A stretch of DNA of 64,000 bases from positions 124,001 through 188,000 of IMG/VR virus record IMGVR_UViG_3300005941_000003. The stretch is one strand, 5' to 3'. Numbering within the stretch: the first letter of the stretch is position 1; each line of letters starts with the position of its first letter. Below, one piece after another: positions 1-57,965 of this stretch. The notes beneath the pieces were generated by a model. It saw only the letters and a list, made by a program, of their open reading frames with translations. It was not told where the DNA came from and ran no database searches. Position numbers and translations under genes: made by a program.

Positions 1-367
1 AGTTTAGTTTAACTTTATGATCTGCAACTGACTTTGGATTTGCTTTTCTACCTGGTTCATCTGGTATATGCTCATAAGTCATTACACGAAATACAAGTTC
101 ATTTTCTTCAAATGAATCCGGATCTACCGCAAAATCTGCTTGTTTCTTTTTCTTATCTGTGTTTTCATCCCATGCTTCTTTTTGAAGTCGGGTTGCTCTA
201 TTTTTTCTTGCTTCTTCAATTGATGGTATAATGTCATCAACTGAATGTAGAATTATGTCATGTTGTGAGTGCAAGGTGCGATCTTCAAACCAAGAGAAAT
301 TTGATTTGGATGTGTGTATTTGCTTCAACATGTCTTTGTTGTTCAAATAATTTTGTCCACGGGCCAT
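1..367 (-). CDS. Late-transcription sigma factor, T4 gp55-like (5' part only; runs off the left edge; not in the ORF track)
   Basis: My translation from ATG at 367 is MARGQNYLNNKDMLKQIHTSKSNFSWFEDR...KANPKSVADHKVKLN, open to the window edge. NYLNNKDML matches the gp55 N-terminal signature (NYVNNKELL in T4). A GGAG SD lies upstream. Confidence 0.75.
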   Translation of the reverse strand, partial: MARGQNYLNNKDMLKQIHTSKSNFSWFEDRTLHSQHDIILHSVDDIIPSIEEARKNRATRLQKEAWDENTDKKKKQADFAVDPDSFEENELVFRVMTYEHIPDEPGRKANPKSVADHKVKLN

Positions 368-8220: not shown

Positions 8221-8228
8221 GATAAATA
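8221..8228 (+). promoter_or_regulatory. T4-type late promoter (GATAAATA)
   Basis: About 30 nt upstream of the gp25-like start; same ATGATAAATA as at 454 and 21684. Confidence 0.7.
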
Positions 8229-8257
8229 CTCTTAACGTAAAAAAGCGAGACCTATAA

Positions 8258-8614
8258 ATGAAACGTTTTAGTGGATTTAGTACAAAGAGCAAATATGCAA
8301 TCAATCATGTTCTCACTGGTAAAGAACTAGTGATCGAAGACTTGATGAATGAAATTATGACTCGCAAAGGCGAGAGAGTAATGATGCCAACTTTTGGTAG
8401 TATTATTCATGATATGATATTTGAACCGCTAACACGTATTACTGTGCAACTTATTGAAGACGATCTGACTGACATTATAAATGCAGAACCAAGATGCGAA
8501 CTAATTTTGCTACAAGTAACAGATAACGATCACAGCGTAAATGTAAGAATTGTAATCAGCATACTTCCATCAAAAGAAGTCACAGAACTAACAATAGATT
8601 TAGAGAGAGAATAA
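8258..8614 (+). CDS. Baseplate wedge subunit gp25-like
   Basis: DL.N.IMTRKGERVMMPTFGS.I.D.IFEP...I...EPR signature. Confidence 0.9.
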   Translation: MKRFSGFSTKSKYAINHVLTGKELVIEDLMNEIMTRKGERVMMPTFGSIIHDMIFEPLTRITVQLIEDDLTDIINAEPRCELILLQVTDNDHSVNVRIVISILPSKEVTELTIDLERE

Positions 8615-21685: not shown

Positions 21686-21693
21686 GATAAATA
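21686..21693 (+). promoter_or_regulatory. T4-type late promoter (GATAAATA)
   Basis: Intergenic, upstream of the GGAG SD and ATG 21724. Confidence 0.7.
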
Positions 21694-21723
21694 TAATATA
21701 ATGAAATCGGAGTAATTTTTTAG

Positions 21724-22386
21724 ATGTTTAACGAGAAAACAGAACCAAAAATCATTGGTGCTATTAAAATTTTTGATAAAGACACCGGTGAAGTGTTGGT
21801 TAAAAAGCGCAACGCAATACACCCAGGTAACATGGCGTATATCTTAGCATGTGCGCTAGGCGGAACACCTACCAGTATCAATCCAGGCGGCGCGACCCCA
21901 TCTATAAATTGGATGGCATTCGGCAACGGTGGCTCAACATCTACTACGACTATCTCTTATAAATCACCTAACGTTTTTACAACTTATGACCAGTATCCAA
22001 TTATATCAAGTAACGCTACGCTATATAACAAAACATATCAGCAGGAGTTACTTGATACAACCGTATACTATCCTGGCCAAGAAGTTGATCTGACGGAGAC
22101 TATTCCAAACAGTACATCAAAGATAAAATTCAGAGTTGAAATGGATCATGCGCAAGTTTCTGCAATGACAGGCGAAACTACACCTGTATCTGACAGTTCA
22201 ACAGACGATGCCGCAATTGCGGCATTTACTTTTGATGAAATTGGTTTAATTTCAGGTGTGACAGTAAATGACGAATTGGACGAATCTAGATCACTTTTAG
22301 TGACACACGTGACATTTCACCCAGTGTTGCTATCAGCGAACAGAACAATAATTATAGAATATACGATAACAATACAACTTGGGTAA
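21724..22386 (+). CDS. Virion structural protein (baseplate / tail-fibre attachment-like)
   Basis: KRNAIHPGNM, FTFDEIGL and THVTFHPV..SANR.I.I.YTI motifs, typical of jumbo-myovirus tail modules. Confidence 0.6.
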   Translation: MFNEKTEPKIIGAIKIFDKDTGEVLVKKRNAIHPGNMAYILACALGGTPTSINPGGATPSINWMAFGNGGSTSTTTISYKSPNVFTTYDQYPIISSNATLYNKTYQQELLDTTVYYPGQEVDLTETIPNSTSKIKFRVEMDHAQVSAMTGETTPVSDSSTDDAAIAAFTFDEIGLISGVTVNDELDESRSLLVTHVTFHPVLLSANRTIIIEYTITIQLG

Positions 22387-43750: not shown

Positions 43751-44637
43751 AAATACTTGTTACAGGCGCAGCGGGATTTATAGGCAATGCGATAGCAAAA
43801 GAACTTAAAGGATCGGACCATGAAGTTATTTTAACTGATATACTCATGCCAGATGAATTACATGGTCATGCTTATACATACGCAGATTTAACAAATCAAG
43901 ATGCAGTTAATAACTTACCGGATGTTGACGTTGTATATCACATGTGTGCATATAATAATACGGCACACTTCTATTCTAAACCAATGAGTGTCATTGATTC
44001 TACGCTTACCCCTACAATATACTTACTGCAACGTTATAAGTCAATAAAAAAATTCATATACGCAAGTAGCAGTGAGATATATGCAGGTGCTATACAACTC
44101 GGTATATCCGATATACCAACACCAGAAGTAAATGTAGGGATAATTAATGGCATTGACAACCCACGTTGGAGTTATGCAGGTAGTAAACTCATGGGAGAAA
44201 TACTAGTACACGCCGCGCACGTCGAGCATGGGCTAAATTATGCAATCATTCGTTATCACAACGTATACGGTAAACGCCAGAAAGCACACTTTATACCAGA
44301 GTATGCAGAGCGTATACAAAACGATGACCGCACATTATACGGCGCGGATCAAACACGTGCATTCTTGTACATAGATGATGCTGCGAAATTGACAGCCATG
44401 GTTGCAGACGTATTAGAAAATGATACTATACATATTGGTAACCCAAAAGAGATTACTATAAAACTGGTGGCGGCGATGATACGTGATATTCTTTTAGTAC
44501 ATACCAAACCAGAATACAAAGATGCACCTGAAGGTAGTGTAGATAGAAGATGTGCAGATATTTCTAAACTATTAGAACTATTCCCAGATTTTAAATTCAC
44601 AGGGCTAGATGCGGGTCTTAGAAAAACTCTGCTATAA
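43747..44637 (+). CDS. NAD-dependent epimerase/dehydratase (extended SDR)
   Basis: VTGAAGFIG, ASSSEIY, YAGSK (YxxxK) and RYHNVYG motifs. Confidence 0.9.
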   Translation: MKILVTGAAGFIGNAIAKELKGSDHEVILTDILMPDELHGHAYTYADLTNQDAVNNLPDVDVVYHMCAYNNTAHFYSKPMSVIDSTLTPTIYLLQRYKSIKKFIYASSSEIYAGAIQLGISDIPTPEVNVGIINGIDNPRWSYAGSKLMGEILVHAAHVEHGLNYAIIRYHNVYGKRQKAHFIPEYAERIQNDDRTLYGADQTRAFLYIDDAAKLTAMVADVLENDTIHIGNPKEITIKLVAAMIRDILLVHTKPEYKDAPEGSVDRRCADISKLLELFPDFKFTGLDAGLRKTLL

Positions 44638-44640
44638 ATA
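44633..44640 (+). promoter_or_regulatory. Late promoter TATAAATA, 5 nt before ATG 44646 (leaderless)
   Basis: TATAAATA-cgaac-ATG; no SD. Confidence 0.7.
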
Positions 44641-44645
44641 CGAAC

Positions 44646-45773
44646 ATGAAATGCCCACTAGTTACCAATCATCTAGAAATAAACTCAAGCGGCGAATTCA
44701 AACCGTGTTGTATTAGTTCGAAGCGATTTGCTATTGACAATAAGATAGCAAATGCAGATACCCATACCATAGATGATATAATACAACACAGTGATCGTAA
44801 CGAGTGGATTAAAAATTTTGATGCAAACTATGAAACTGATTGTAGACAATGCTATGAAGTAGAACGTAGTGGTGGTGAAAGTAAGCGCATCAGAGAACTT
44901 AGAGATTGGCGAACTAACTATCATTTCAAATCTGATACATTGCAATCTCTTGATTTGAAGATGGGTAATACCTGTAATCTCGCTTGTGCAATATGCGCAC
45001 CAGATAGCAGCAGTAAATGGGCATCAATATACAAACAACTTGGTTACGATACTGGTATACGACTACAACGTTGGCCAGAACGTGATGAATTTTGGGAACA
45101 ACTCAACCAACACGCCCAAAACATACAAAAGATAGAACTTGCTGGCGGCGAACCGTTTATGATTAAGAAGCAAGAAATACTAATCAACTTCTTAATAGAA
45201 CGAGACTTAGCAAAGAATATAGATATAACTTGGTTTACAAACTGTACTATATGGCCAGAGAATATTGTGAAGCACTTTGATAAGTTCAAACAAGTTCGTA
45301 TAATGCTTAGTATCGACAATACGGGTGAACAATTCGAATACATACGATACCCTGCAAAATGGAATGAAGCATATGATATATTCTTGAAGTTCAAGGAGTT
45401 ACATAGTCGCAAGATAGTAAATCTAGGCATATCACATTCTATAGGATTACTAAATGTATGGAGATTACCAGAGTTTCACGCGTGGTGCAGACAGCACGAA
45501 GTATCTGTATTCAACAATCTTATAATGAATCCACTAAGTGCAAAAGACTTACCGAAAGAGTTTAAATTGCGAGTAGCAGAAAAGTTGAGTAAGTGTAGCG
45601 ACCCCTCATACCAACATAACCCAGTTGTTGGAGAAAACAATTGGCTCATACAGTTTATGATGGGAGACAGTGATAACAATCTACAGCATCTCACTGAAAA
45701 AGTTATACCATCTCGTCCGACGATAGATATATATGAGGCGTTTCCTGAATTGAAAGGAATGTTAAATGTATGA
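44646..45773 (+). CDS. Radical SAM protein with N-terminal Twitch-type domain (#5)
   Basis: KCPL...PCC...CRQC; CNLACAIC; AGGEPF. Confidence 0.92.
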   Translation: MKCPLVTNHLEINSSGEFKPCCISSKRFAIDNKIANADTHTIDDIIQHSDRNEWIKNFDANYETDCRQCYEVERSGGESKRIRELRDWRTNYHFKSDTLQSLDLKMGNTCNLACAICAPDSSSKWASIYKQLGYDTGIRLQRWPERDEFWEQLNQHAQNIQKIELAGGEPFMIKKQEILINFLIERDLAKNIDITWFTNCTIWPENIVKHFDKFKQVRIMLSIDNTGEQFEYIRYPAKWNEAYDIFLKFKELHSRKIVNLGISHSIGLLNVWRLPEFHAWCRQHEVSVFNNLIMNPLSAKDLPKEFKLRVAEKLSKCSDPSYQHNPVVGENNWLIQFMMGDSDNNLQHLTEKVIPSRPTIDIYEAFPELKGMLNV

Positions 45774-46560
45774 TACTCTTTGGCTAGGTTGTTCACATAG
45801 TTCTGGTAGTTATTGTAAAGATACTGGAGAACTTATAGACCAATCTCATAGTATTCCATCCGTTCTTGCGACAAAACTAAATCAACGTTGGAAAAGCATT
45901 TCATTTCCAGGTGATGGGGTGATGAAATATGCAGAAGCAGTGAAGTTGCTTGATGAAAACAAGTTATTATCCAATTTTAGAAATATAATCATACAGCGCA
46001 CTTATGAGCCTCGTATGACGTTTTTTAATGATAGCGATTATATTTACGATAGAATACTAGAATACGTAAACGACCCAAATCGATTTGAAACTATTATATC
46101 AGTAAGACCACCAACCGAACGTACTTTTTCTCTTTTCGCACATCAGAACTACGATCAGTATCATTCTAAATTTGCAGGTAAAGAAATAGAATTAATAGAT
46201 ATGTTTGAAAATATATCTCACAGTGTTGATCCCAGAGAAAGCACCACAGAGACTACACAGTATCCAAGTCTTTGGGTTGATGTGCATTATGATTATATAA
46301 AATATACTGCGGATAAAAACAATTGCAAATTGTATATGTTTGATTACGTGGGCAGTTTTAGAAACCAAAATCGTAGATGGAAAATTAACAAACCATTTAA
46401 ACGCACACTTATTAATGGTGATCAAGATTTTGTTTTCCACCATCTTACAGAACAAAATAGATTAGATTTGTTAGCGTCTGCACAGCACCCTACACACGGT
46501 GCAGTTGATTTGCTGGTAGACATATTATATAAAGAGTTGAATGATGAAGAATATAAATGA
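45766..46560 (+). CDS. SGNH-like protein (#3)
   Basis: WLGCSHSSG, SFPGDG and C-terminal AQHPT motifs. Confidence 0.55.
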   Translation: MYDTLWLGCSHSSGSYCKDTGELIDQSHSIPSVLATKLNQRWKSISFPGDGVMKYAEAVKLLDENKLLSNFRNIIIQRTYEPRMTFFNDSDYIYDRILEYVNDPNRFETIISVRPPTERTFSLFAHQNYDQYHSKFAGKEIELIDMFENISHSVDPRESTTETTQYPSLWVDVHYDYIKYTADKNNCKLYMFDYVGSFRNQNRRWKINKPFKRTLINGDQDFVFHHLTEQNRLDLLASAQHPTHGAVDLLVDILYKELNDEEYK

Positions 46561-47734
46561 CGCGTTTTGTATTGCACCATGGATGCATATGCATGTGGAA
46601 CCAGATGGTGAAGTGCAACTATGCTGTGCATCAAACTGGAAACACGAACATCAGCGCAGTCTCGGCAATCTAAACGAAAGCAGCCCAGAAGAAATCTGGA
46701 ATAACTCACAGTATCGTATGGTGCGTAAGAATATGCTAGAGGGTCGTAAGATGCCTCAGTATTGCTCACCTTGTTATGATCGTGAAGCAGGTGCTATTAA
46801 CCAAACAGAGAGACAGCGTTTCAATCGCGAGTTTGCAAATACATTTGATTTAGTTCCTACTACACTGAGTGACGGTACACTAGATACACTAAAGCTAAAG
46901 TATCTAGACATTCGATTTAACAATCTATGTAATCTAAAGTGTCGTACATGTGGTCCTGATTGGAGTACAAGCTGGGCAAACGAAATGGGTATTGAGAAGC
47001 CACTACTATACAACAACACGTGGCGTAAGTTACTACCGTATCTAGATCAATTAGAGAAAGTATACTTTGCTGGCGGTGAACCACTTATGACCCCAGAACA
47101 CTACGATTTCTTAGAACAACTTGTCGAGATTAACCCAAACATTGAATTGTTATACACATCAAACTTTAGTAGACTATCGCTAAAGAACCGTCATGTGTTA
47201 GATTACTGGCCTAAGTTTAAACTTGTAAGTGCTATTGCTAGTATAGATCATTACGGTGAACATGCAGCATATGTTCGCACAGGCAGTGACTATAATACGA
47301 TAGTAAAAAATATAAAAGAGTTACAGAACGCCGGGCATCGCAACATTCAACCAGCAGTAACAAGTGTGTATTCTATATACAATGCAACCCGTCTCGGTGA
47401 TTTCGTTATTCGACTATTCGAAGACGGTGTTATACAAACTATGGATCAGATTGTATTCAACATACTGGTTAACCCAGATTATCAAATGGCAACAATTATA
47501 CCAGAAAGTGCGCTAGAATTTGCTATAGCTAACACACAAAAAGGTATAGATTATCTGATATCACATGGGCACAACCCACAGAAATTACAGAGCGCAATAG
47601 ACTGGTTGACATCAAATTGGAACTATGATAAGATCAAATTCAACAAGTTTGTAGAATACAATCTAGACTTAGATACTAAGCGCGGCACTGACTTCTATAC
47701 TATGTATCCAGAGTTCGGCGAGTGTAGGGATTAG
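46541..47734 (+). CDS. Radical SAM protein with N-terminal Twitch-type domain (#6)
   Basis: FCIAPW...LCC...CSPC; CNLKCRTC; AGGEPL. Confidence 0.92.
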   Translation: MMKNINDAFCIAPWMHMHVEPDGEVQLCCASNWKHEHQRSLGNLNESSPEEIWNNSQYRMVRKNMLEGRKMPQYCSPCYDREAGAINQTERQRFNREFANTFDLVPTTLSDGTLDTLKLKYLDIRFNNLCNLKCRTCGPDWSTSWANEMGIEKPLLYNNTWRKLLPYLDQLEKVYFAGGEPLMTPEHYDFLEQLVEINPNIELLYTSNFSRLSLKNRHVLDYWPKFKLVSAIASIDHYGEHAAYVRTGSDYNTIVKNIKELQNAGHRNIQPAVTSVYSIYNATRLGDFVIRLFEDGVIQTMDQIVFNILVNPDYQMATIIPESALEFAIANTQKGIDYLISHGHNPQKLQSAIDWLTSNWNYDKIKFNKFVEYNLDLDTKRGTDFYTMYPEFGECRD

Positions 47735-47803
47735 CGCCGCGCGGGGCGAAGTTCGAGCGGCACCAAGATAATCCCGGAACAAGCCATCGGAGATGGCTTG
47801 GTT
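47735..47803. other. GC-rich intergenic element with hairpins
   Basis: gccgc/gcggc (47736-47761) and the perfect caagccatc-gga-gatggcttg hairpin (47780-47800), followed by aaaatttttt. Confidence 0.6.
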
Positions 47804-47823
47804 AGGAAAATTTTTTGGAGCAT

Positions 47824-47843
47824 TAAGTGCGCACTTATAAATA
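47824..47843 (+). promoter_or_regulatory. 14-bp palindrome overlapping a late promoter TATAAATA that lies 5 nt before ATG 47849
   Basis: taagtgcgcactta (47824-37); TATAAATA (47836-43)-tatct-ATG. Confidence 0.7.
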
Positions 47844-47848
47844 TATCT

Positions 47849-49108
47849 ATGGAACCTAAAGCAAACAATTCATTCTGTTACTATCCTTTCACCGCACTTG
47901 CCGTAAAACGTTGGGTACAGGGTAAGTTTTCACCTTTTCCATGCTGTAATTCTGGACATTTACTTAATGCAGAATGGGAATCAAATTTTCCCAAAAATGC
48001 TACCCTAGATGCTGCATTTCATTCAAAACCTATGAATGATCTTAGACAAGATATGTTAGCTAATCGTAAGCCTGATATATGTGGAGTATGTTGGCGTAGA
48101 GAGAAACATTATGGAAGTTCTCCAAGATTGCATAGCGCACATATACTTAAAGGTAACACCATTGACATACACAATCCTCAACTACAAGTGTTAGATATTG
48201 GTACTGGAAATACCTGCAATTTAAGATGTAGAATGTGTACTCCATTTTCATCTAGTGAGTTGATGAAAGATAGAGACCAATTTGTAGAACGTAATGTAAA
48301 GTATTGGAGAAGTTTTCCATATACTGACGAAATCTTAAAGAGTGAATCCATCAATAAGTTTGACAAAAACAATGAAGATTGGACCAGTATATTTGACACC
48401 ATTGAAAACTACACTTATATAAAAGCTAGTGGTGGAGAAACATTACTATCAAATCAGTTCATAGACTTCCTACAAAAATGTATAGATGAAGATCATGCCC
48501 AGAACATAATACTTCAAATTACTACAAATGCTACACAGTTGACGAAACCAAACATAGAGAGATTAAAGAAGTTCAAAGGGTTAGAGTTCATATTCTCTAT
48601 AGATGGGATAGACAAGATATATGAATACATTAGATATCCACAATCGTTTGATAAGTTAGAACGCAGTATAGATAAATTCTTTGATAACGGATTGATAAAA
48701 GGAACGCTAGACATAAACTATACACTCACAGTATATAATGTTCATGACATAGAAAACACGATAGACTGGGTTTACAAGTTGAGTAAGCGTTATGATACAT
48801 TCATAAACTTTACAATAAGCAATGTGTTTCAAACAACACCCTTTGACATAAGTGGACTAACACCAGAGATACTACAACCTATATACGATAGAGTTGTAGA
48901 CTTAGAGGGTTACTATAGGGAACAGATTAATCTGAATACAGTAGAGGGCATCAATCATATAGCACGATGTATAGAACAGGGTGTAGATACCAAGATGAGG
49001 GATAAGTTTATATACTTAACACATGAGTTCGATAAGAACAGGGATCAATGCTATTCAGACTATGTACATCCCATACTAGCGGCGTATATAGAGGCGAATA
49101 CGGTATAG
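47849..49108 (+). CDS. Radical SAM protein with N-terminal Twitch-type domain (#7)
   Basis: FCYYPF...PCC...CGVC; CNLRCRMC; SGGETL; FSIDG. Start moved from TTG 47798 to ATG 47849. Confidence 0.9.
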   Translation: MEPKANNSFCYYPFTALAVKRWVQGKFSPFPCCNSGHLLNAEWESNFPKNATLDAAFHSKPMNDLRQDMLANRKPDICGVCWRREKHYGSSPRLHSAHILKGNTIDIHNPQLQVLDIGTGNTCNLRCRMCTPFSSSELMKDRDQFVERNVKYWRSFPYTDEILKSESINKFDKNNEDWTSIFDTIENYTYIKASGGETLLSNQFIDFLQKCIDEDHAQNIILQITTNATQLTKPNIERLKKFKGLEFIFSIDGIDKIYEYIRYPQSFDKLERSIDKFFDNGLIKGTLDINYTLTVYNVHDIENTIDWVYKLSKRYDTFINFTISNVFQTTPFDISGLTPEILQPIYDRVVDLEGYYREQINLNTVEGINHIARCIEQGVDTKMRDKFIYLTHEFDKNRDQCYSDYVHPILAAYIEANTV

Positions 49109-49175
49109 GGGTAAGTTGAGGCATAGTGTTACGGAAAACCAAAAAAATGCTTGCGGGATGGCCTCAGATTCGCGG

Positions 49176-49204
49176 AGTATAGCACCTGAAAAATAAAAGT
49201 TCAA
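49176..49204 (-). promoter_or_regulatory. Sigma70-like promoter pointing antisense into rSAM #7
   Basis: Minus strand TTGAAC, 17 nt, TATACT with extended -10 TG; no substantial minus-strand ORF follows. Confidence 0.45.
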
Positions 49205-49235
49205 CTCTTTTTTTACTAGAAGTGGAAAAAATATT

Positions 49236-50441
49236 ATGAAAGATTCTGAAAATTTTTGTATACTACCATGGGTTCATATGCATATATGGCCTAACGGTAC
49301 TACCTATCCTTGCTGTTTAGCTACGAATGACTACGTGATAGGGGATACGAATACACACTCTATGCTAGAGATATGGAATAGTCCTAAGCAACGTATGCTA
49401 CGCAAGAACATAATGAGTGGTAAGCCTACGAGTGGGTGTACACGTTGTTATGAACACGAAGCTAATGGTATACGTAGTATGAGACAGAATATGAATAATG
49501 ACTATGCACATCATTATGATAGAGTAGACTTAACATACCCAGATGGTAGCTTAGATGATATACATATGGCTTATCTAGATATACGCTTCTCTAATATATG
49601 TAACATGCGTTGTCGTACATGTGGCCCTGAACTATCCAGTGGATGGGTAGATGATGCTGTAAAGACTGGTAGATATCGTGCAGATCAACCTAAGATATTA
49701 AAGATAAAGCCTACACTAGCAGAATTCTGGGAGGATGTAGAACCATGGATAGGCAGTGTAGAACGTATATACTTTGCTGGTGGTGAGCCGCTGATTATGG
49801 ATGAACACTATAAGATCCTAGAGCATTTGATTTCGATAGGTAAAACAGATATACCTATAGCATACAATACTAACTTTTCTCGCTTGACATACAAGAGCCA
49901 TGATGTTATAGAGTTATGGCGGCAGTTTAGTGATATTACAGTAGGTGCCTCACTAGATGCTAAAGGTAATCGCGCTGAGTATATGCGTAAGGGTACAGTA
50001 TGGGCTGACATCTGTGCTAACCGTGAACGTATGATACGTGAAGTCCCACATGTAAAGTTTATGATTAGTTCGACAGTAAGTGCTTATAATGTGATGACTA
50101 TAACTGAATTTTGGGATGATTGGATTACACGTGGATGGGTTGATCCTCTACAGATAGATGTGAATATGTTGCTATTCCCTGAACATCATCGTTTACAAGT
50201 GCTGCCAGAAGGTTTGCGTAACATTGCTAAAGATCGTATTGGGGAATATATCGAGCGGTGGGGTATACTAGAACGTGATGATAATGGTAGAACTAGTAGT
50301 GGATTACTTGGGTTAGTACGTGCGTTAGATGGTAGTGAAAAGGGTTGGTTTAAGTTCTGTCATAAGAATGTAGCGTTAGATGCTATACGCGGTGAGAGTT
50401 TCTATACTGTATTCCCAGAGTTCATGCCCTATGCGCTTTAG
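49236..50441 (+). CDS. Radical SAM protein with N-terminal Twitch-type domain (#8)
   Basis: FCILPW...PCC...CTRC; CNMRCRTC; AGGEPL. Confidence 0.92.
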   Translation: MKDSENFCILPWVHMHIWPNGTTYPCCLATNDYVIGDTNTHSMLEIWNSPKQRMLRKNIMSGKPTSGCTRCYEHEANGIRSMRQNMNNDYAHHYDRVDLTYPDGSLDDIHMAYLDIRFSNICNMRCRTCGPELSSGWVDDAVKTGRYRADQPKILKIKPTLAEFWEDVEPWIGSVERIYFAGGEPLIMDEHYKILEHLISIGKTDIPIAYNTNFSRLTYKSHDVIELWRQFSDITVGASLDAKGNRAEYMRKGTVWADICANRERMIREVPHVKFMISSTVSAYNVMTITEFWDDWITRGWVDPLQIDVNMLLFPEHHRLQVLPEGLRNIAKDRIGEYIERWGILERDDNGRTSSGLLGLVRALDGSEKGWFKFCHKNVALDAIRGESFYTVFPEFMPYAL

Positions 50442-51340
50442 TAAAGTTGTACACCGCGATTGTTTAACACAAGACGTTCCCAACCTTGATTAACCCATAC
50501 ATTTTGATTGTAGTCTAGTATTTCTTCTACAGTCATATCAGGGGTACATCCATCACGATATATAGCGGAGTGTAGTGTAAACTGCCCATGTTGTGGTGGT
50601 AACGGTTTACACTTTAAACCATGTACTACAACATCATGTAATGTTTCTTCGAACAATGAATCGTCTATGCGTGGTGTGCTGAAACGTTTTAACATCTGAT
50701 CTAAGTAATGATCCCCTATCATAGGGAATGCCCAAGATGCAGTAGCGTAACGCGCAACAAACCATGTATCATTCACAGCGGTGTTTTCAAATACACCATT
50801 GAAGTAAATTTGCCTACGGTTGATATGGCCAAATGGGTCTACATTCTTTCTAGTATGAAACTCGGGTACTAGATCGTAACGCCATTTAACGACATGACTA
50901 TAACTTGTACCAGTACTGGTTGCATACTCTAACATAGCTTTACTTGCGTGACTTACGGAGTATGCTTGTGAGAGATAACCGATACCCATAAGGTCACGGT
51001 TTTTACCCCAATTATTATAATGAGTTTCGTACAAATCTATTAACTCATGATATGAAGTTACAGTTGAGTATCTAGGTTGTAGTACACTTACATCAGTTAG
51101 TGGTACAGGTTTAATGCGTTCCCGTAACCAATTTGATGGTATATTGCCGGTCTTTAAGTTTGATCTGATTGATGCCCATTCTTCGTTATCATCTATTACG
51201 ATATCATCAGCGGTTTGATGACAAAAGAAATCCACATCATATCCACTGTTGCCCAACCCCTTGAATTGTTCTACAATACGAGGTGCGGTGTCAGCAATCG
51301 TGCGAGTTCTACCAGTCATTAATACAGCAATCTTTTTCAT
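50438..51340 (-). CDS. Glycosyltransferase-like protein (K-IAV...WRYDL family, #1)
   Basis: MKKIAVLMTG..R, VDFFCH, VVKWRYDL and VNDTWF motifs; paralog of 53112-54050. Start moved from 51376 to 51340. Confidence 0.55.
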   Translation of the reverse strand: MKKIAVLMTGRTRTIADTAPRIVEQFKGLGNSGYDVDFFCHQTADDIVIDDNEEWASIRSNLKTGNIPSNWLRERIKPVPLTDVSVLQPRYSTVTSYHELIDLYETHYNNWGKNRDLMGIGYLSQAYSVSHASKAMLEYATSTGTSYSHVVKWRYDLVPEFHTRKNVDPFGHINRRQIYFNGVFENTAVNDTWFVARYATASWAFPMIGDHYLDQMLKRFSTPRIDDSLFEETLHDVVVHGLKCKPLPPQHGQFTLHSAIYRDGCTPDMTVEEILDYNQNVWVNQGWERLVLNNRGVQLY

Positions 51341-51345
51341 ATATG

Positions 51346-51361
51346 TATTTAGTACTAAATA
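51346..51361. promoter_or_regulatory. Perfect 16-bp palindrome forming a bidirectional late promoter (CTAAATA on both strands)
   Basis: tatttagtactaaata; ATG 5 nt away on the minus strand (51340) and 6 nt away on the plus strand (51368). Confidence 0.75.
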
Positions 51362-51367
51362 TGGATA

Positions 51368-52078
51368 ATGATACATGAATTTAAGACTGGACGCAGTGGT
51401 TCTACAGTTGCATTAATCGCATATGGGAACGGTACTGCTATACACAAAACTAATGTACGGAATGCTGAGAAGGTGGTAGAGTTGATGCGTAACTCACCGC
51501 TACCAACACCAGTGGTATATGAATATACTGATAGTTCTATTACACTAGAGTATATACCTGGTATCCCTATGCGTAAGCACATCTATACTATGAACAAGAG
51601 TGAACTAGACCGTACTGTTGGGATATTGCGTGACTATATAAGTGATTGTCTCGCAAAGTCTACTCCCTATGATTATAGTGCTGAGATTGCTGCTAAAGAG
51701 TCGAGTACCGGATACCAGGCGCGAATCACCAATCCAGTCTTCCCCAAATACAATATACACGGTGATTTGACAATTGACAACCTTTTATGTTATGAAGGTA
51801 AAATATATTTCATAGACTATAACTATACTGAATTAGATTCCATATACTTTGATGTAAATAAACTACGACAAGACTTAGATGGGCTGTGGTTCGCACGTAA
51901 TCATACCCCCAATGTAACTGTTAAGATGAACTTAAACTATATCAAGCGACATCTAGACTGTGCATTTCCGGGAATGTTCCGTGATGATCTTTACAGATTT
52001 CAGTTAAGTCGTATACTCCCCTATGTGAGTGGAGCAGAACATGAGTTCATAATGAGAGAAATAAAACGATGCGAGTAA
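51368..52078 (+). CDS. APH/choline-kinase-like phosphotransferase
   Basis: GRSGS, LEYIPG, IHGDLTIDNLL, YFIDY and D..KLRQDL motifs. Confidence 0.8.
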   Translation: MIHEFKTGRSGSTVALIAYGNGTAIHKTNVRNAEKVVELMRNSPLPTPVVYEYTDSSITLEYIPGIPMRKHIYTMNKSELDRTVGILRDYISDCLAKSTPYDYSAEIAAKESSTGYQARITNPVFPKYNIHGDLTIDNLLCYEGKIYFIDYNYTELDSIYFDVNKLRQDLDGLWFARNHTPNVTVKMNLNYIKRHLDCAFPGMFRDDLYRFQLSRILPYVSGAEHEFIMREIKRCE

Positions 52079-53115
52079 TTGTGCCATGCGCTGGACGCAG
52101 TAGTAGATTCCCTAATACTAGACCTAAATATTTGTTAACAATGCCAGACGGAGAATTGATGCTACAACATGTAGTACGCAATTGGATAGAAGATTATCCG
52201 GTAACTGTTGTAATAAATCGTGAACACGAAGAACAGTATCGTGTAATAGATATTATAGAAAGAATATGGGGGAAACTAGTAAGTGTGCATATAGTTGAAC
52301 ACTATACTAATGGTCCTGCTGAAACTATATATGAGACTGTTAAAGCGTGGGATGACACACCGTTCTATGTGCAGGACTGTGATAGTTTGTTTAATATTAA
52401 ACTACCTGCCGTTAATCGTAACTTTGTAGCGCACGTAGACCTAAATGATTATCCTACTCTAACTAACATTGCTGCTAAGAGTTTTGTTACACTACACGAA
52501 GAACTGCTTTCAAACATTGTAGAGAAGCGATTGATTAGTGACAACGTATGTGTGGGAGGTTATGGGTTTCATAGTTCATATGGGTATAGACATCACTATG
52601 AACTGTTAGTAGAACGTCAAGGTAAAGATTCTGAACTATTCATATCACATGTTATCAAAACAATGATGGAAAACGGTTGCATATTCGGTGGGGTTCGTGC
52701 TATAAACTACTTAGATTGTGGTACATACGAATCATTTATAGAGAATCAGAAACGTCATGCCACTATATTCTGTGACCTTGATGGAGTAGTATTCTATAAT
52801 CAATCACGATACTTTGAGAACAACTATTCTATAGAACCTAAACTAAAGCCACAGGCAGTGTCATTCTTATTGGGTAAGCAAGAGAACGGTGCGCATATAG
52901 TGTTCACTACCGCCAGACCTAGTGGCGCTGCTGGCATAACTGAGGCTGCATTAGGTGCGGCCGGGTTTAAAGATTATAGAATACTATACGATCTACCACA
53001 TGCCCCACGTATGTTAATCAATGATGTGAGTGCATCTAACCCATGGCCTAGTGCTATAGCTATTAACTCACCACGTGATGATGACGATTACTGGAAAGCT
53101 GTACAAGAACGTTAA
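52069..53115 (+). CDS. Nucleotidyltransferase (GT-A / NTP_transferase) fused to a C-terminal HAD phosphatase
   Basis: IVPCAGRSSRF...PKYLL, GPAET, QDCD and DCGT; then FCDLDGV, FTTARP and LIND. Confidence 0.8.
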   Translation: MRVIVPCAGRSSRFPNTRPKYLLTMPDGELMLQHVVRNWIEDYPVTVVINREHEEQYRVIDIIERIWGKLVSVHIVEHYTNGPAETIYETVKAWDDTPFYVQDCDSLFNIKLPAVNRNFVAHVDLNDYPTLTNIAAKSFVTLHEELLSNIVEKRLISDNVCVGGYGFHSSYGYRHHYELLVERQGKDSELFISHVIKTMMENGCIFGGVRAINYLDCGTYESFIENQKRHATIFCDLDGVVFYNQSRYFENNYSIEPKLKPQAVSFLLGKQENGAHIVFTTARPSGAAGITEAALGAAGFKDYRILYDLPHAPRMLINDVSASNPWPSAIAINSPRDDDDYWKAVQER

Positions 53116-54050
53116 CCACCATAGCCTTCATTAGATATACTATGATCTGGTGGTATGTCTTGTCTAAACAGTCGCAAGTATTCATCTAGTTCGCCATCAT
53201 TTAGTTCAAAGAAATCACCCCGCACACTGACATTGGGTCTTACAAAGTTATCTGAAATTAAACCAGCAATTTTGTCGCATTCTGTGACTAATCTATGCAA
53301 ATTGTTTTGTGCGATGTACTGTAGAAATGCTGCTTCTAAGTATATACCGCGACTATCGCCTGTACGAGTTGCAGCATATACATCGGTATGAACAGTCTTG
53401 AATAACGGTATTGCAGATGAATTAAATCCAAACCAACGATCATTATTACCATCAATTAGTAATCCACCTATCTGATATGGTATATCACAGAGTATTGCAG
53501 GTGGTGAAGTCTTTTTAAAGAAGAACTGTTGTGCCTTTGCGATAAATGATGTTGGGGTATCTTGTAAATGTTCTACAACTAAATCTGCGAATGCTTTATA
53601 GTTAATCAACAGATCATAACGCCATCTGACTATCATATCGTAATTTGCAAGATCATATTCATGTAGTACACGTTGTAATCCCCAAAACTGTGCAGTTAAG
53701 TTTACATAAGGTATGAAATGATCGCGGTCTTCGTCAAATCCTTCTGCGCTATGCATATCACTAAACGAACTGCGAACTATACCTTTAGTATAAGGCCTTA
53801 GCGCAGTTACGGTGCGCTCTTGTAATTCTGGTGATTCGTCTGGTAAATGCTCTGTTAACGACAGAGACTTGAATACTGTACCACCATCCCAAACCCTAGG
53901 GAATTTACTATGATCATTCCACAAATGCAAGTAATAATCAACCGCCACGCCACGTCTACGCAATTCATCAAACGCTCCATACAGTGCATCATAGTTCTCA
54001 CTACGTGCATTACACAGTCCAACAAATACTACAGCTATACGTTTCTTCAT
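53112..54050 (-). CDS. Glycosyltransferase-like protein (K-IAV...WRYDL family, #2)
   Basis: MKKRIAVVFVG, VDYYLHLW, YDMIVRWRYDL and NNDRWF motifs. Confidence 0.55.
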   Translation of the reverse strand: MKKRIAVVFVGLCNARSENYDALYGAFDELRRRGVAVDYYLHLWNDHSKFPRVWDGGTVFKSLSLTEHLPDESPELQERTVTALRPYTKGIVRSSFSDMHSAEGFDEDRDHFIPYVNLTAQFWGLQRVLHEYDLANYDMIVRWRYDLLINYKAFADLVVEHLQDTPTSFIAKAQQFFFKKTSPPAILCDIPYQIGGLLIDGNNDRWFGFNSSAIPLFKTVHTDVYAATRTGDSRGIYLEAAFLQYIAQNNLHRLVTECDKIAGLISDNFVRPNVSVRGDFFELNDGELDEYLRLFRQDIPPDHSISNEGYGG

Positions 54051-54055
54051 AATAA

Positions 54056-54067
54056 TATTTATAAATA
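54056..54067. promoter_or_regulatory. Perfect 12-bp palindrome forming overlapping bidirectional TATAAATA late promoters
   Basis: tatttataaata; ATG exactly 5 nt downstream on both strands (54050 minus, 54073 plus). Confidence 0.8.
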
Positions 54068-54072
54068 TGGTT

Positions 54073-54981
54073 ATGATCGAATATGCTTATATAGAAACCA
54101 CCAATCACTGTAACCTACAATGCTCATTCTGCAATAGACATGAGGTTATAGGGCCACTACAACACATGCCATTACAACGGTTTACAAGATTAATGGAAAG
54201 GCTTAAGGATCATCCTATACATACAGCCAAACTAATGGGTATGGGGGAACCATTCATGCATCCACAATTCGATAAGATTACTAGTACATTTAAGGAATAC
54301 TTTCCCGAATCATTCTTAATCTCCGCTACTAACTGTCAATATACCCTATCACAAGCACCATGGTTCGTCAACTCCCTAAAGCATATTGATATGTTATATC
54401 TATCTATAGATGGGTATCAAGAAACATATGAACGATTCCGTCCACCAAGCAAGTGGAATAAACTAATAAAGTTCTTAGATGAATTATCTACAGTAGATAG
54501 ACACAATTGTCGTATAGTGGTTAATTATGTAGTAAATCCAGGCAATGTAGATGATATTGAACCAGTATATCATGACATCGTATTAAAATATAATCTAGCT
54601 GAATTACGTCTTAACATAGCACAAGACTGGAGTCAAGATAAAAACATGACGGGCGGGTATACCCCAGAACAACTAGAATATCTAAAAGGTTGGGATTCCG
54701 CTATACAGGGTAAAAGTGAATGGGATTATGATCAATGCTTCTGGGTAAAGAACGGTTTATACACTACTGTAGAGGGTAGAGTTCTAGCATGTTGTATGAA
54801 TACTGGTGCGAAAGAATTTGGGAATATATTTTCGGATACTATAGAGAATATTCATGGTGATCTAGAATTCATGAGAGTTAAACATGGGTGTGCCACTAAT
54901 AAGCCAACTGAACACTGTGCTAACTGTTCATATAAAGAATTGGTCCCTATACTGAAAGAACTGGGTATCCATCGTGCCTAA
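54073..54981 (+). CDS. Radical SAM protein with C-terminal SPASM/Twitch domain (#9, conventional architecture)
   Basis: IETTNHCNLQCSFC, GMGEPFMH, LSIDG and C-terminal C.W...ACC...G...C..C. Start moved from 54067 to 54073. Confidence 0.9.
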   Translation: MIEYAYIETTNHCNLQCSFCNRHEVIGPLQHMPLQRFTRLMERLKDHPIHTAKLMGMGEPFMHPQFDKITSTFKEYFPESFLISATNCQYTLSQAPWFVNSLKHIDMLYLSIDGYQETYERFRPPSKWNKLIKFLDELSTVDRHNCRIVVNYVVNPGNVDDIEPVYHDIVLKYNLAELRLNIAQDWSQDKNMTGGYTPEQLEYLKGWDSAIQGKSEWDYDQCFWVKNGLYTTVEGRVLACCMNTGAKEFGNIFSDTIENIHGDLEFMRVKHGCATNKPTEHCANCSYKELVPILKELGIHRA

Positions 54982-56065: not shown

Positions 56066-56717
56066 ACTGTTTACATTTGGATGTTCTTATACAGAATATT
56101 ATTGGGAAACATGGGCTGATATTATAGGGCGAGATTTGGGTATACCGTACTATAATTATGGATTAAGTGGTTGTGGTAATAGTTTAATTGCACATCGTAT
56201 GTTAGAAGCAGATATAGAACATGGTTTGAGTTCTGACGATTTAATATTAGTAAATTGGACTAGCTGGTGGAGAGAAGATCGTGTTAATCCGCGAGGGGAT
56301 TGGTTGGTACGTGGTCACATCTTTAATAACCCACATTATTCGGGTGAATTTATTAAACGTTATTGGAACACATATAATGATACTGCAAAGAATGCTGGTG
56401 CGATAATTAGTAGCAATCGTGCATTTCCAATTGTGTTTCAGTCTCACATGACTGATTATGAAATAGATGATTACGCCGATGCTTTGAAAAGTTTTTCTAC
56501 ATTGGTTTCTGCATTACCAGAAAAACATTTATTTGATGTTTCAAATAATTCTAAATTTGGCGGTACTAGTGCAGATGCGCACCCAGATATATTATGTCAT
56601 TTAAATCATGCTATTAAAATTTATGATTATTGCGGGTTAACTATGTCAGAGGAAACTGTAGAATGGTGTAATGCGCGACAAGAAGAACTAATAAATAGAA
56701 ATAAGAAAAAAACTTAA
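56052..56717 (+). CDS. SGNH-like protein (#4)
   Basis: LFTFGCSYT, NYGLSGCGN, VNWTS..REDR and DAHP motifs. Confidence 0.7.
   Translation: MRWRRLFTFGCSYTEYYWETWADIIGRDLGIPYYNYGLSGCGNSLIAHRMLEADIEHGLSSDDLILVNWTSWWREDRVNPRGDWLVRGHIFNNPHYSGEFIKRYWNTYNDTAKNAGAIISSNRAFPIVFQSHMTDYEIDDYADALKSFSTLVSALPEKHLFDVSNNSKFGGTSADAHPDILCHLNHAIKIYDYCGLTMSEETVEWCNARQEELINRNKKKT
56691..56697 (+). promoter_or_regulatory. Probable late promoter ATAAATA upstream of the full-length UDP-Glc dehydrogenase
   Basis: About 40 nt upstream of ATG 56736, with a GGAG SD in between. Confidence 0.45.
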
Positions 56718-56735
56718 AATAACGGAGAGTATTGA

Positions 56736-57965
56736 ATGAGTAAAATTGGATTTATTGGCGTTGGTAAACTAGGCATGCCCTGTGCAGAAACGGTTGCACG
56801 TAAGGGACATGATACGAAAGGTTACGATGTAGCACCACGTAGCAGTGAACATATCACAGTGGTGAATTCAATTGAAGAACTTGTACATGATCGTGATATT
56901 GTGTTTATTGCAGTACCTACACCACATGATCCTCTTTACGATGGCAATGCTCCAACTGCACATTTAGAGCCAAAAGACTTTGATTATTCTATTGTGCGAG
57001 AATGTATCATTGAAGCAAACAAACATATGAATTCTAGTCAATTACTAGTATTAATTAGTACAGTTTTGCCGGGAACAACTCGCCGTGAATTTATTAAACA
57101 TATTACTAACCCACGATTTGTTTATAACCCATATTTAATTGCGATGGGTTCGGTTGCATGGGATATGGTAAATCCAGAGATGGTTATGATCGGTACGCAA
57201 GATGGCGATGCTAATGGTGATGCGCGTGAATTAACTGATTTCTATCGTACAATTATGGAAAATGATCCTCGCTATGTAGTAGGTACTTGGGACGAATGCG
57301 AAGCAATTAAAGTATTTTACAATACATTTATTTCCGCTAAAATCGGTCTTGTTAATATGATTCAAGATGTTGCAGAGGCGCAAGGTAATATTAATGTTGA
57401 CGTAGTTACTGATGCACTAGCACAATCAACAATGCGTATTATGGGACCACAGTATATGAAAGCCGGTATGGGAGATGGCGGCGGTTGTCACCCACGTGAT
57501 AATATTGCACTACGATATATGGCAAGTGAATTAAATCTAGGCTATGATTTATTTGATTCGATTATGGGCGCACGTGAAATTCAAGCAAAGAATATTGCAA
57601 AGCGTCTTGCATATTATGCAACAAAGCATTCACTGCCAGTTGTTATTCACGGCAAAGCATACAAGCCAAATGTCCCATATGTCGAGGGCAGCTATTCTAT
57701 GTTAATCGGCAGCTATCTAGATGAAAGGGGCATTCATCATTATTATGTTGATCCATTGACAGGTGATACTGTTATTCCTTCTGGACCAGCTGTATTTTTA
57801 ATGGCTCACAGTGCGTCAACTACATATGAATATACTGGAAATACGCACGAAGATAAATTGTATTGTGAAATTCCACAAGGTTCAATTGTCATTGACCCAT
57901 GGCGTAAATTCGAAAAAGTGGATGGCATTACTGTTTATCATTATGGAAATTCGAGACAGAATTAA
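56736..57965 (+). CDS. UDP-glucose/GDP-mannose 6-dehydrogenase family protein (full length)
   Basis: GFIGVGKLG, IAVPTP, STVLPGTT, KVFYNTFIS, GDGGGCHPRD, GKAYKP and IDPW motifs. Confidence 0.9.
   Translation: MSKIGFIGVGKLGMPCAETVARKGHDTKGYDVAPRSSEHITVVNSIEELVHDRDIVFIAVPTPHDPLYDGNAPTAHLEPKDFDYSIVRECIIEANKHMNSSQLLVLISTVLPGTTRREFIKHITNPRFVYNPYLIAMGSVAWDMVNPEMVMIGTQDGDANGDARELTDFYRTIMENDPRYVVGTWDECEAIKVFYNTFISAKIGLVNMIQDVAEAQGNINVDVVTDALAQSTMRIMGPQYMKAGMGDGGGCHPRDNIALRYMASELNLGYDLFDSIMGAREIQAKNIAKRLAYYATKHSLPVVIHGKAYKPNVPYVEGSYSMLIGSYLDERGIHHYYVDPLTGDTVIPSGPAVFLMAHSASTTYEYTGNTHEDKLYCEIPQGSIVIDPWRKFEKVDGITVYHYGNSRQN

What the first reader, a model, noticed from the sequence alone, without database searches (positions are those of the whole stretch)
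44633..54075. Island genes appear to be leaderless late transcripts, with TAAATA exactly 5 nt before the ATG
Seen: TAAATA-N5-ATG at 44646 (+), 47849 (+), 51340 (-), 54050 (-) and 54073 (+), and N6 at 51368 (+). The N5 cases have no SD. Structural genes instead have the element about 25-30 nt upstream, mostly with a clear SD. Established: the T4 late element spans about -13 to -6, which puts +1 on the A of ATG, and Alphaproteobacteria translate leaderless mRNAs readily. Inference: a ~13-bp promoter-plus-start unit makes any captured gene late-expressed at once, which would explain how the island accretes genes. It also corrects four ORF starts.
Basis: partly seen in the sequence, partly recalled or inferred. 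Interest (0 to 1): 0.75.

Follow-up and report, generated by a model that had tools for sequence, protein, structure and literature searches.

The report
Late promoter fused to start codon
In this roughly 342-kb marine jumbo phage, the six-base core of a T4-type late promoter (TAAATA) sits exactly five bases before the ATG of 14 genes that have no ribosome-binding site, so their late mRNAs most likely begin at the start codon itself; I found no description of this compact on-switch for T4-like phages, and it still needs RNA evidence.

Summary
All five TAAATA-N5-ATG sites and the one N6 site are at the stated coordinates. Across the 246-kb contig, the TAAATA-to-ATG offset has one sharp spike at 5: 15 of 171 sites against about 2% background (P about 9e-6). 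Twelve of the 15 open ORFs of 69-515 aa. Distances from TAAATA to gene starts are bimodal: exactly 5 (no SD), nothing at 6-11, then 20-33 (80% with SD). Both classes share the extended motif (G/T)A-TAAATA-(C/T). The phage encodes a gp55-family late sigma factor. TAAATA precedes the tail sheath, terminase and virion genes, and is about three-fold depleted elsewhere. Orthologues at 43-75% identity keep the N5 unit although the flanking DNA is unalignable. In a strain about 4% diverged, indels fall between the back-to-back boxes and leave the box-to-ATG spacing unchanged. T4 and five cultured relatives lack this class.

- The class is not island-specific; 9 of the 14 N5 genes lie elsewhere, including conserved core genes.
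- The host is unknown.
- No RNA data exist.
- The "gene accretion" idea rests on one natural example.

Verdict: probably leaderless late mRNAs, a new variant of a known kind.

The parts
44635..44648 (+). TAAATA-N5-ATG unit. The TAA of the box is the stop codon of the upstream epimerase gene (43747-44637). It starts the SPASM/radical-SAM gene 44646-45773 and the overlapping genes through 47734.
   Evidence: 44646 is the only candidate start, there is no SD (+1.6 kcal/mol), and the SPASM domain begins at residue 3.
47838..47851 (+). TAAATA-N5-ATG unit that starts the radical-SAM gene 47849-49108. It is preceded by a 114-nt gap holding a stable hairpin.
   Evidence: The 17-aa extension from the TTG at 47798 is unmatched by four paralogues.
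51338..51351 (-). TAAATA-N5-ATG unit on the minus strand that starts gene 50438-51340 (300 aa, phrog_13607-like).
   Evidence: The paralogue N-termini align from MKK, so the longer start at 51376 is rejected.
51356..51370 (+). TAAATA-N6-ATG unit that starts the kinase-like gene 51368-52078. It is the only N6 case in the genome.
   Evidence: Its orthologues have N5 (L124) and N4 (L123).
51346..51361 (.). A 16-bp perfect palindrome, TATTTAGTACTAAATA, formed by two back-to-back boxes 4 bp apart that drive divergent genes.
   Evidence: The X23 strain has a 2-nt deletion in the 4-bp spacer and no substitution between 51288 and 51381.
54048..54061 (-). TAAATA-N5-ATG unit on the minus strand that starts gene 53112-54050 (312 aa, a paralogue of 50438-51340).
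   Evidence: It is the first candidate start and has no SD.
54062..54075 (+). TAAATA-N5-ATG unit that starts the radical-SAM/SPASM gene 54073-54981 and the downstream overlapping genes.
   Evidence: Orthologues without the opposite-strand insertion lack the box and overlap the upstream gene instead.
54056..54067 (.). A 12-bp perfect palindrome, TATTTATAAATA, formed by two abutting boxes. The two start codons are 23 bp apart.
   Evidence: The X23 strain carries a 3-nt insertion that can be placed exactly between the two boxes.
21688..21726 (+). Example of a leader-type (class B) late promoter: TAAATA, a 30-nt leader with an SD, then the ATG at 21724.
8223..8260 (+). Class B promoter: TAAATA, a 29-nt leader, then the ATG at 8258, upstream of large tail/baseplate-region genes.
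56692..56738 (+). Class B promoter inside the island: TAAATA, a 38-nt leader with a GGAG SD, then the ATG at 56736 (UDP-glucose dehydrogenase-like gene).
1..367 (-). The 5' part of the gp55-family late sigma factor gene (genome 123489-124367), which is the presumed reader of TAAATA.
   Evidence: phrog_12791 at E 1.7e-81, and 51% identity to the PA5oct late sigma.

Best explanation
TAAATA, in the extended form (G/T)A-TAAATA-(C/T), is the late promoter of this phage. It is read by host RNA polymerase carrying the phage's gp55-family sigma factor, and transcription starts about six bases after the box, as in T4.

The phage uses the box in two ways. In about 55 places it lies 20-33 nt upstream of a gene and gives an ordinary leader with a Shine-Dalgarno site. 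In 14 places in the full genome (five in this finding, plus one N6) it lies exactly five bases before an ATG. There the transcript begins with the AUG itself, and the leaderless mRNA is translated without a Shine-Dalgarno site.

Because box plus start codon take only 14 bp, a gene can have its own late promoter even when the intergenic space is 8-25 bp. Two such units placed back to back form a 12-16-bp palindrome that drives two divergent genes.

Shown here: the motif, its exact spacing, the missing SD, the sigma gene, and conservation of the unit. Inferred: the transcription start position, late timing, and translation of the leaderless RNA.
For: 1. Spacing. Offset 5 holds 15 of 171 sites against about 2% background (P 9e-6). 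Twelve of the 15 open ORFs of 69 aa or more. Distances to called starts are 12 at 5, none at 6-11, then a hump at 20-33. A gap at 6-11 is expected if leaders that short are useless. There is only one N6 case, one N8 case, no N4 case and no GTG/TTG case. At offset 5 there are 12 exact motifs and no one-mismatch variants.

2. Same element in both classes. The flanks match: G/T at -2, A at -1, C/T at +1. An SD of -5 kcal/mol or better is present in 80% of class B and 8% of class A.

3. Promoter identity. The phage has a gp55-family sigma. No -35-like conservation is seen. Class B boxes precede the tail sheath, large terminase and virion proteins, while gp43, gp41, UvsX, gp46 and the sigma gene have no box. 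The hexamer is depleted: 37 against 106 expected in the window, and 171 against 216-360 for composition-matched hexamers. The T4 motif lies at -13 to -6 (PMC1524935; PMC2988020).

4. Start-site signature. All 12 class A sites have a pyrimidine at -1 and A at +1, against 42% pyrimidine at other genes (P 3e-5).

5. Read-through or coupling cannot serve many of them. Four of the 12 have a divergent upstream neighbour. Three follow gaps of 55-143 nt that hold hairpins of -19 to -21 kcal/mol. In relatives, a hairpin followed by a T run (by eye) ends 2-12 nt before the box.

6. Conservation.
- Orthologues of the gene at genome 16867 in three or four distinct lineages at 71% identity, and one at 43%, keep GA-TAAATA-N5-ATG although the upstream DNA is unalignable.
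- The orthologue of the gene at genome 51148 (75%) keeps it too.
- In a strain about 4% diverged, a 2-nt deletion and a 3-nt insertion fall between the paired boxes and leave every box-to-ATG distance intact.

7. The near-complete 342-kb contig of the same phage has 17 N5 sites against 8 for the reversed-pattern control, and adds two more N5 genes.
Against: - There is no RNA evidence of any kind. No RNA run was listed, the host is unknown and the phage is uncultured.
- T4-family profiles for the co-activator gp33 and the clamp gp45 found nothing, even in the 92%-complete contig. The T4 activation mechanism therefore cannot be assumed in full.
- Spacing is not absolutely fixed across lineages. 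The kinase-like gene has N6 here, N5 in L124 and N4 in L123, and the 54073 orthologue in L126 has N4.
- Five of the 12 have a co-directional neighbour 8-25 nt upstream, so termination-reinitiation could contribute there.
- One class B box precedes a ribonucleotide reductase gene, which is not a classic late gene.
- The distance table used my own gene caller, which prefers an N5 start where one exists. The start-agnostic counts do not depend on it.
Confidence: 0.7

Rival explanations
1. TAAATA is the late promoter, but the N5 arrangement is only a by-product of genome compaction. The box (often reusing a TAA stop codon) happens to abut the next gene, and the N5 genes are really translated from longer read-through mRNAs by termination-reinitiation or SD-independent initiation. 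Transcripts that start at the ATG would then be irrelevant or untranslated.
For: Two sites use the upstream gene's TAA as part of the box, and five have co-directional neighbours 8-25 nt away. The L150 orthologue of the 44646 gene has the same stop context but a spacer of about 33 nt with AAAGG and no box.
Against: - Four of the 12 are divergent, with no upstream co-directional gene, and three follow long gaps with strong hairpins.
- Relatives appear to carry terminator-like hairpins just before the box.
- Compaction would not give exactly 5 twelve times and nothing at 4 or at 7-11.
- Indels in strain X23 avoid the box-to-ATG interval.
- The -1 pyrimidine rule holds 12 of 12 times.
Confidence: 0.14
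2. At the N5 sites, TAAATA acts in the RNA as an A/U-rich, SD-independent translation enhancer or ribosome standby site at -11 to -6, and not as a promoter.
For: The N5 genes lack an SD. A/U-rich upstream tracts are known to help initiation through ribosomal protein S1 (own knowledge). The phage encodes its own IF3 and bS21, which hints at altered initiation.
Against: - The same hexamer with the same flanks occurs 20-33 nt upstream of SD-bearing genes, too far away to be a ribosome site.
- There are no one-mismatch variants at offset 5, whereas A/U enhancers are degenerate.
- The hexamer is purged from the rest of the genome on both strands, as expected for a DNA signal.
- Palindromic back-to-back pairs make sense for DNA recognition.
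Confidence: 0.08
3. The pattern is chance, or an artefact of start-codon choice in an AT-rich genome.
For: The window-only count is weak (6 against 2.28; 3 of 100 shuffles reach it). My gene caller was told to prefer N5 starts.
Against: The start-agnostic genome-wide spike has P 9e-6, and 12 of 15 sites open long ORFs. The unit is conserved in orthologues with unalignable flanks. T4 and five cultured relatives show no such class under the same analysis.
Confidence: 0.02

Closest known systems
Bacteriophage T4 late promoters (TATAAATA at -13 to -6; gp55 sigma, gp33 co-activator, gp45 sliding-clamp activator)
   Same: The six-base core TAAATA is identical. There is no -35 element, the region just downstream is AT-rich, a gp55-family sigma gene is present, and the motif lies upstream of virion genes with leaders of about 15-28 nt that carry an SD.
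   Different: The two 5' bases are (G/T)A rather than TA; only 11 TATAAATA occur in the genome. Profiles for gp33 and gp45 find nothing. In 150 kb of T4, no TATAAATA or TAAATA at N5 coincides with an annotated gene start; the hump is at 13-32. Here a second class sits exactly at N5.
Leaderless mRNAs, such as lambda cI from PRM, many genes of Actinobacteria, Deinococcus-Thermus and Archaea, and some of their viruses (own knowledge; PMC4633059 and PMC5312081 were seen)
   Same: A -10-type element lies at a fixed short distance from an AUG that is also +1. There is no SD, the start codon is strictly AUG, and very short leaders of 1-6 nt are avoided.
   Different: The promoter here is a phage-specific, gp55-type late element rather than a housekeeping -10 box. 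The class coexists with a majority of SD-led genes in the same phage. Whether the unknown host translates leaderless mRNAs well has not been established.
PA5oct, Rak2-type and SCTP-2-type jumbo myoviruses (nearest cultured relatives by late sigma, 39-51% identity)
   Same: They share the gp55-like sigma with an N-terminal extension, a similar position next to the SbcCD-like nuclease genes, and a T4-like replication core.
   Different: TAAATA-N5-ATG is not enriched over the reversed-pattern control in PA5oct, Phosso, XaC1, SCTP-2 or fENko-Kae01 (15/12, 3/2, 2/11, 24/19, 8/11). Of the 30 sites examined there (of 52 found), 11 open ORFs of 50 aa or more, about half of them internal to longer reading frames. 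The PA5oct paper reports only sigma70-like promoters (PMC7318152).

Membership tests
T4-type (gp55-dependent) late promoter | Conserved TATAAATA-like box with no -35 element | tested here: met
   The TAAATA core is invariant and the flanks are (G/T)A and C/T. Nothing is conserved further upstream. There are no one-mismatch variants at offset 5.
T4-type (gp55-dependent) late promoter | Phage encodes a gp55-family sigma factor | tested here: met
   phrog_12791 at E 1.7e-81 and phrog_234 at E 4.2e-22. tblastn gives 51% identity to the annotated late sigma of PA5oct-like phages and more distant matches to cyanophage gp55.
T4-type (gp55-dependent) late promoter | Box lies upstream of virion structural and packaging genes and not of replication genes | tested here: met
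   The tail sheath, large terminase and three virion proteins carry it. gp43, gp41, UvsX, gp46 and the sigma gene do not. One exception is NrdA.
T4-type (gp55-dependent) late promoter | gp33 co-activator and gp45 sliding clamp present | tested here: inconclusive
   T4-family profiles phrog_254 and phrog_223 and tblastn found nothing in the 246-kb contig or the 342-kb contig. Divergent analogues cannot be excluded.
T4-type (gp55-dependent) late promoter | Transcription starts about 6 nt after the box, late in infection and dependent on replication | not testable with these tools
   No RNA run was listed, and the phage is uncultured.
Leaderless mRNA | Promoter -10-type element at a fixed short distance, so that +1 is the A of the AUG | tested here: met
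   The spacing is exactly 5 in 12 genes (14 in the full genome) and N6 once. This matches the T4 -13 to -6 geometry. The transcription start site itself is inferred.
Leaderless mRNA | No Shine-Dalgarno sequence; AUG start codon | tested here: met
   Eleven of 12 have an anti-SD duplex weaker than -3.5 kcal/mol (median +0.5), against 80% strong SDs in class B. All 12 use ATG.
Leaderless mRNA | Mapped primary 5' end at the start codon, and translation from it | not testable with these tools
   This needs dRNA-seq or Cappable-seq, plus Ribo-seq or N-terminal proteomics.

The most novel reading that the evidence does not exclude
A clade of marine jumbo phages uses a 14-bp promoter-plus-start-codon unit, often as a 12-16-bp palindromic bidirectional pair, as a general plug-in. 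The unit gives newly inserted or rearranged accessory genes immediate late expression. The phage's own IF3 and bS21 retune host ribosomes so that these leaderless late mRNAs are translated efficiently.
Probability: 0.2. Interest if true: 0.85.

Novelty: new variant of a known kind. Interest (0 to 1): 0.62.

Why it matters
T4-type late transcription is a textbook system, and its promoters are known only with ordinary SD-bearing leaders. A second, exactly spaced class that fuses the late box to the start codon has three consequences.

- It would show that gp55-type polymerases can serve leaderless translation.
- It would explain how genes in very tight or divergent arrangements get their own late promoter.
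- It gives annotators a simple rule for correcting start codons in this phage clade.

It also gives a testable handle on how accessory-gene islands are rewired. The same radical-SAM gene is translationally coupled to its upstream neighbour in three lineages. In the two lineages where an opposite-strand gene sits between them, it is box-driven instead. Together with the phage-encoded IF3 and bS21, this raises the question of whether large phages tune start-site selection by the ribosome.

Tried and rejected
- RNA evidence. One search for RNA runs on 50438-54981 listed none, and only DNA runs hold the region. Transcription start sites could therefore not be mapped.
- Near-identical phage records. 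Megablast of the island and of 22-32 kb against 50,697 phage records found nothing.
- Plain tblastn with T4 gp55, gp45, gp44, gp62, RegA, RpbA and gp33 gave only noise. gp55 was found only with PHROG profiles.
- Sigma70-like promoters and intrinsic terminators in 43-56 kb are at shuffle level: 56 against 55 and 7 against 5.8. They do not explain expression of these genes.
- Cultured relatives (PA5oct, Phosso, XaC1, SCTP-2, fENko-Kae01) show no N5 class. The PA5oct paper lists only sigma70-type promoters.
- Host identification. The genome-collection scan with the phage IF3 found no close cellular relative. The 5.8-billion-protein search returned unnamed metagenomic homologues, several on contigs of 280-356 kb. 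There are no tRNA genes in the window. The host remains unknown.
- Literature. No paper in the library links gp55-type late promoters with leaderless mRNAs. My recollection that Thermus phage P23-45 late transcripts are often leaderless could not be checked there.
- One call failed through my own slip.


Full report
**What the window is.** The window is bases 124001-188000 of a 245,963-bp viral contig from marine metagenomes, with 38.7% G+C. A 342,181-bp contig that CheckV rates 92% complete carries the same sequence, and its two ends overlap by 126 nt. The assembly is therefore circular and the genome is about 342 kb. The phage is a distant member of the T4 superfamily: tblastn finds gp43, gp41, UvsX and gp46 homologues. 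Its nearest cultured relatives are the PA5oct, Rak2-type and SCTP-2-type jumbo myoviruses.

**Checking the observation.** In the window, TAAATA-N5-ATG occurs 6 times against 2.28 expected, which alone is weak: 3 of 100 shuffles reach 6. But TAAATA itself occurs only 37 times against 105.6 +/- 10.3 expected. In the whole contig it occurs 171 times, against 216-360 for hexamers of the same composition. Over all 171 sites, ATG follows at offset 5 in 15 cases (8.8%) and at every other offset from 0 to 45 in 1-9 cases. Composition-matched hexamers give 2.1% at offset 5, so the binomial P is 9e-6. Twelve of the 15 ATGs open ORFs of 69-515 aa. At all other offsets from 0 to 10, only three ATGs open an ORF of 50 aa or more, one each at N6, N8 and N10.

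**Two classes of the same element.** I called 276 genes with a self-trained codon model. Of all TAAATA sites, 43% lie within 60 nt upstream of a co-directional start, against 9.6% for control hexamers. The distances are bimodal: 12 at exactly 5, none from 6 to 11, and a hump at 20-33. That table used a caller which prefers an N5 start where one exists; the start-agnostic counts above do not depend on it. Both classes share the flanks, with G/T at -2, A at -1 and C/T just after the box, and nothing is conserved where a -35 element would be. Class B (12-46 nt, 55 sites) has an SD of -5 kcal/mol or better in 80% of cases (median -6.4). Class A (N5) has one in 8% (median +0.5). At offset 5 there are 12 exact boxes and no one-mismatch variants. 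All class A starts are ATG. All 12 have a pyrimidine at -1, against 42% at other genes (P 3e-5), which is the usual preference around a bacterial transcription start.

**Why TAAATA is read as a late promoter.**
- The contig encodes a gp55-family sigma factor that overlaps the left edge of the window: phrog_12791 at E 1.7e-81, phrog_234 at E 4.2e-22, and 51% identity to proteins annotated as late sigma in PA5oct-like phages.
- Class B boxes precede the tail sheath, the large terminase and virion proteins.
- The replication genes and the sigma gene itself have none.
- The T4 late motif TATAAATA lies at -13 to -6 (PMC1524935). It has no -35 partner and an AT-rich downstream segment (PMC2988020).
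- As a control, the same analysis on 150 kb of T4 gives a hump at 13-32 for TATAAATA and no annotated gene start at N5.
- Profiles for T4 gp33 and gp45 found nothing here, so the activation machinery may differ.

**Why read-through or coupling does not explain the N5 genes.**
- Four of the 12 have a divergent neighbour. Three follow gaps of 55-143 nt with hairpins of -19 to -21 kcal/mol. Only two reuse the upstream stop codon as part of the box.
- The two divergent pairs in the finding are perfect palindromes: TATTTAGTACTAAATA at 51346-51361 and TATTTATAAATA at 54056-54067. In the second pair the two start codons are only 23 bp apart.
- There is no room for any leader with an SD in these arrangements.

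**Comparative evidence.**
- Orthologues of the N5 gene at genome 16867 (phrog_13937) were found in IMG/VR contigs at 71% identity in three or four distinct lineages. All have GA-TAAATA-N5-ATG. The upstream DNA is unalignable and appears, by eye, to contain a terminator-like hairpin followed by a T run.
- A 43% orthologue also has N5. A 41% orthologue instead has the box plus an 18-nt leader containing AGGAGG.
- The orthologue of the gene at genome 51148 (75%) keeps N5.
- Over 209 orthologue comparisons, class A stayed class A in 6 of 7 comparisons with orthologues of 43% identity or more. The other class A comparisons are about 25% paralogue hits. G001 and G004 look like near-duplicate contigs, so these are fewer independent lineages.
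- Run X23 holds a strain about 4% diverged. Its only changes between 51288 and 51381 are a 2-nt deletion inside the 4-bp spacer between the two boxes. At the other pair, a 3-nt insertion can be placed exactly between the two boxes. Every box-to-ATG distance is therefore kept. Substitutions near 54060 were not listed, so that box is not fully verified.
- Five cultured relatives show no N5 enrichment, and most of the N5 ATGs examined there open no long ORF.

**The island and the accretion idea.** The stretch 44.6-54.1 kb holds 5 of the 12 N5 starts, among 10 gene starts (P 1.4e-5). It reads as six short transcription units, each begun by an N5 or N6 box. The genes are SPASM/radical-SAM enzymes, two paralogous proteins of unknown function, a kinase-like protein and sugar-nucleotide enzymes.

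The class is not island-specific, however. Other N5 genes are a conserved phage protein, a virion-protein-like gene, an HNH endonuclease, a B12-binding radical-SAM gene, three small ORFs, and two more genes in the part of the genome outside this contig.

Metagenome contigs give one natural experiment. In L123, L124 and L129 (84%, 70% and 70% identity for the 54073 protein) the order is kinase-like, NTP-transferase, radical-SAM, aminotransferase. The radical-SAM start directly abuts or overlaps the end of the NTP-transferase gene (an ATGA overlap, read in L123), and there is no box. In this phage and in L126 (71%), an opposite-strand gene lies between the NTP-transferase and the radical-SAM gene, flanked by back-to-back boxes. 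In L126 the spacing is N5 for the minus-strand gene and N4 for the radical-SAM gene. The two inserted genes are only 33% identical, so two separate insertions are possible, but the direction of change is not settled.

The kinase-like gene has N6 here, N5 in L124 and N4 in L123. The minus-strand paralogue in L123 has a 33-nt leader with AGGAG. The 61% orthologue of the 44646 gene keeps the same upstream stop context but has a spacer of about 33 nt and no box. In the island, then, the unit is gained and lost quickly and tolerates a shift of one base either way. In two core genes it is old and exact.

**Start codons.** Paralogue alignments support 47849 over the TTG at 47798 and 51340 over 51376. 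The choice of 54073 over 54067 rests only on the model. The starts at 44646, 54050 and 51368 were already the longest-ORF starts.

**What remains open.** There are no RNA data. I found no paper in the library that links gp55-type late promoters to leaderless mRNAs.

**Verdict.** I put the leaderless-late-promoter reading at about 0.7. It is a new variant of two known things, T4-type late promoters and leaderless mRNAs.

Noticed in passing
Outside the window: genome (G000) 11227-12010, minus strand; L156:1465-2248: The phage encodes a full-length translation initiation factor IF3 (IF3_N plus IF3_C, 180 aa) whose end overlaps a ribosomal protein bS21 gene (82 aa, 54 bits against a cut-off of 27). 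IF3 homologues at 50-65% identity sit on other metagenome contigs of 280-356 kb, so this may be a trait of the clade. No TAAATA lies upstream of either gene. A link to translation of the SD-less N5 genes is possible but untested.
   Followed up: partly
Whole window and genome: TAAATA is strongly avoided: 37 against about 106 expected in the window, and it is the rarest of the composition-matched hexamers genome-wide. Of the copies that exist, 43% sit just upstream of co-directional gene starts.
   Followed up: yes
window 22000-62000: A block of about 40 kb is rich in radical-SAM genes. At least five paralogues have the SPASM domain at the N-terminus, ahead of the radical-SAM core, which is an unusual order. 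The block also carries sugar-nucleotide enzymes (epimerase, two UDP-glucose dehydrogenase-like genes, an aminotransferase, an NTP-transferase, and a cytidylyltransferase fused to a mannose-6-phosphate isomerase/cupin domain) and a peroxiredoxin. Its product is unknown.
   Followed up: partly
window 53112-54075, compared with L123, L124, L126 and L129: Gene-order polymorphism: the opposite-strand gene 53112-54050 is present here and in L126 but absent in three related lineages, where its two neighbours directly abut or overlap.
   Followed up: partly
window 48370 and 53273 (read laying, runs X15 and X18): Contigs from two other samples leave the window sequence at the same two points with identical unmatched continuations. 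This suggests strains with different island content. One breakpoint lies inside the 47849 gene and the other inside the 53112-54050 gene.
   Followed up: no
G006 (342,181-bp IMG/VR contig) ends; window about 50933-51058: The last 126 nt of the large contig repeat bases 2-127 of its start, so the assembly is circular although it is labelled linear. The 246-kb contig studied here is a fragment of it.
   Followed up: yes
Outside the window: genome 210019-210561, minus strand (L009): An HNH endonuclease, a typically mobile gene, is one of the N5 genes. It is preceded by a -20.6 kcal/mol hairpin.
   Followed up: partly
window 47735-47848 and 49109-49235: Two unusually long intergenic spacers (114 and 127 nt) in an otherwise tightly packed island each contain stable hairpins. 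No Rfam or other RNA search was run on them.
   Followed up: no
Outside the window: genome 51146-51205: A third divergent pair: an N5 gene on the minus strand and, 54 bp away, a plus-strand gene with TAAATA-N8-ATG. An alternative ATG 18 nt upstream overlaps the box. Which start is used is unclear.
   Followed up: partly
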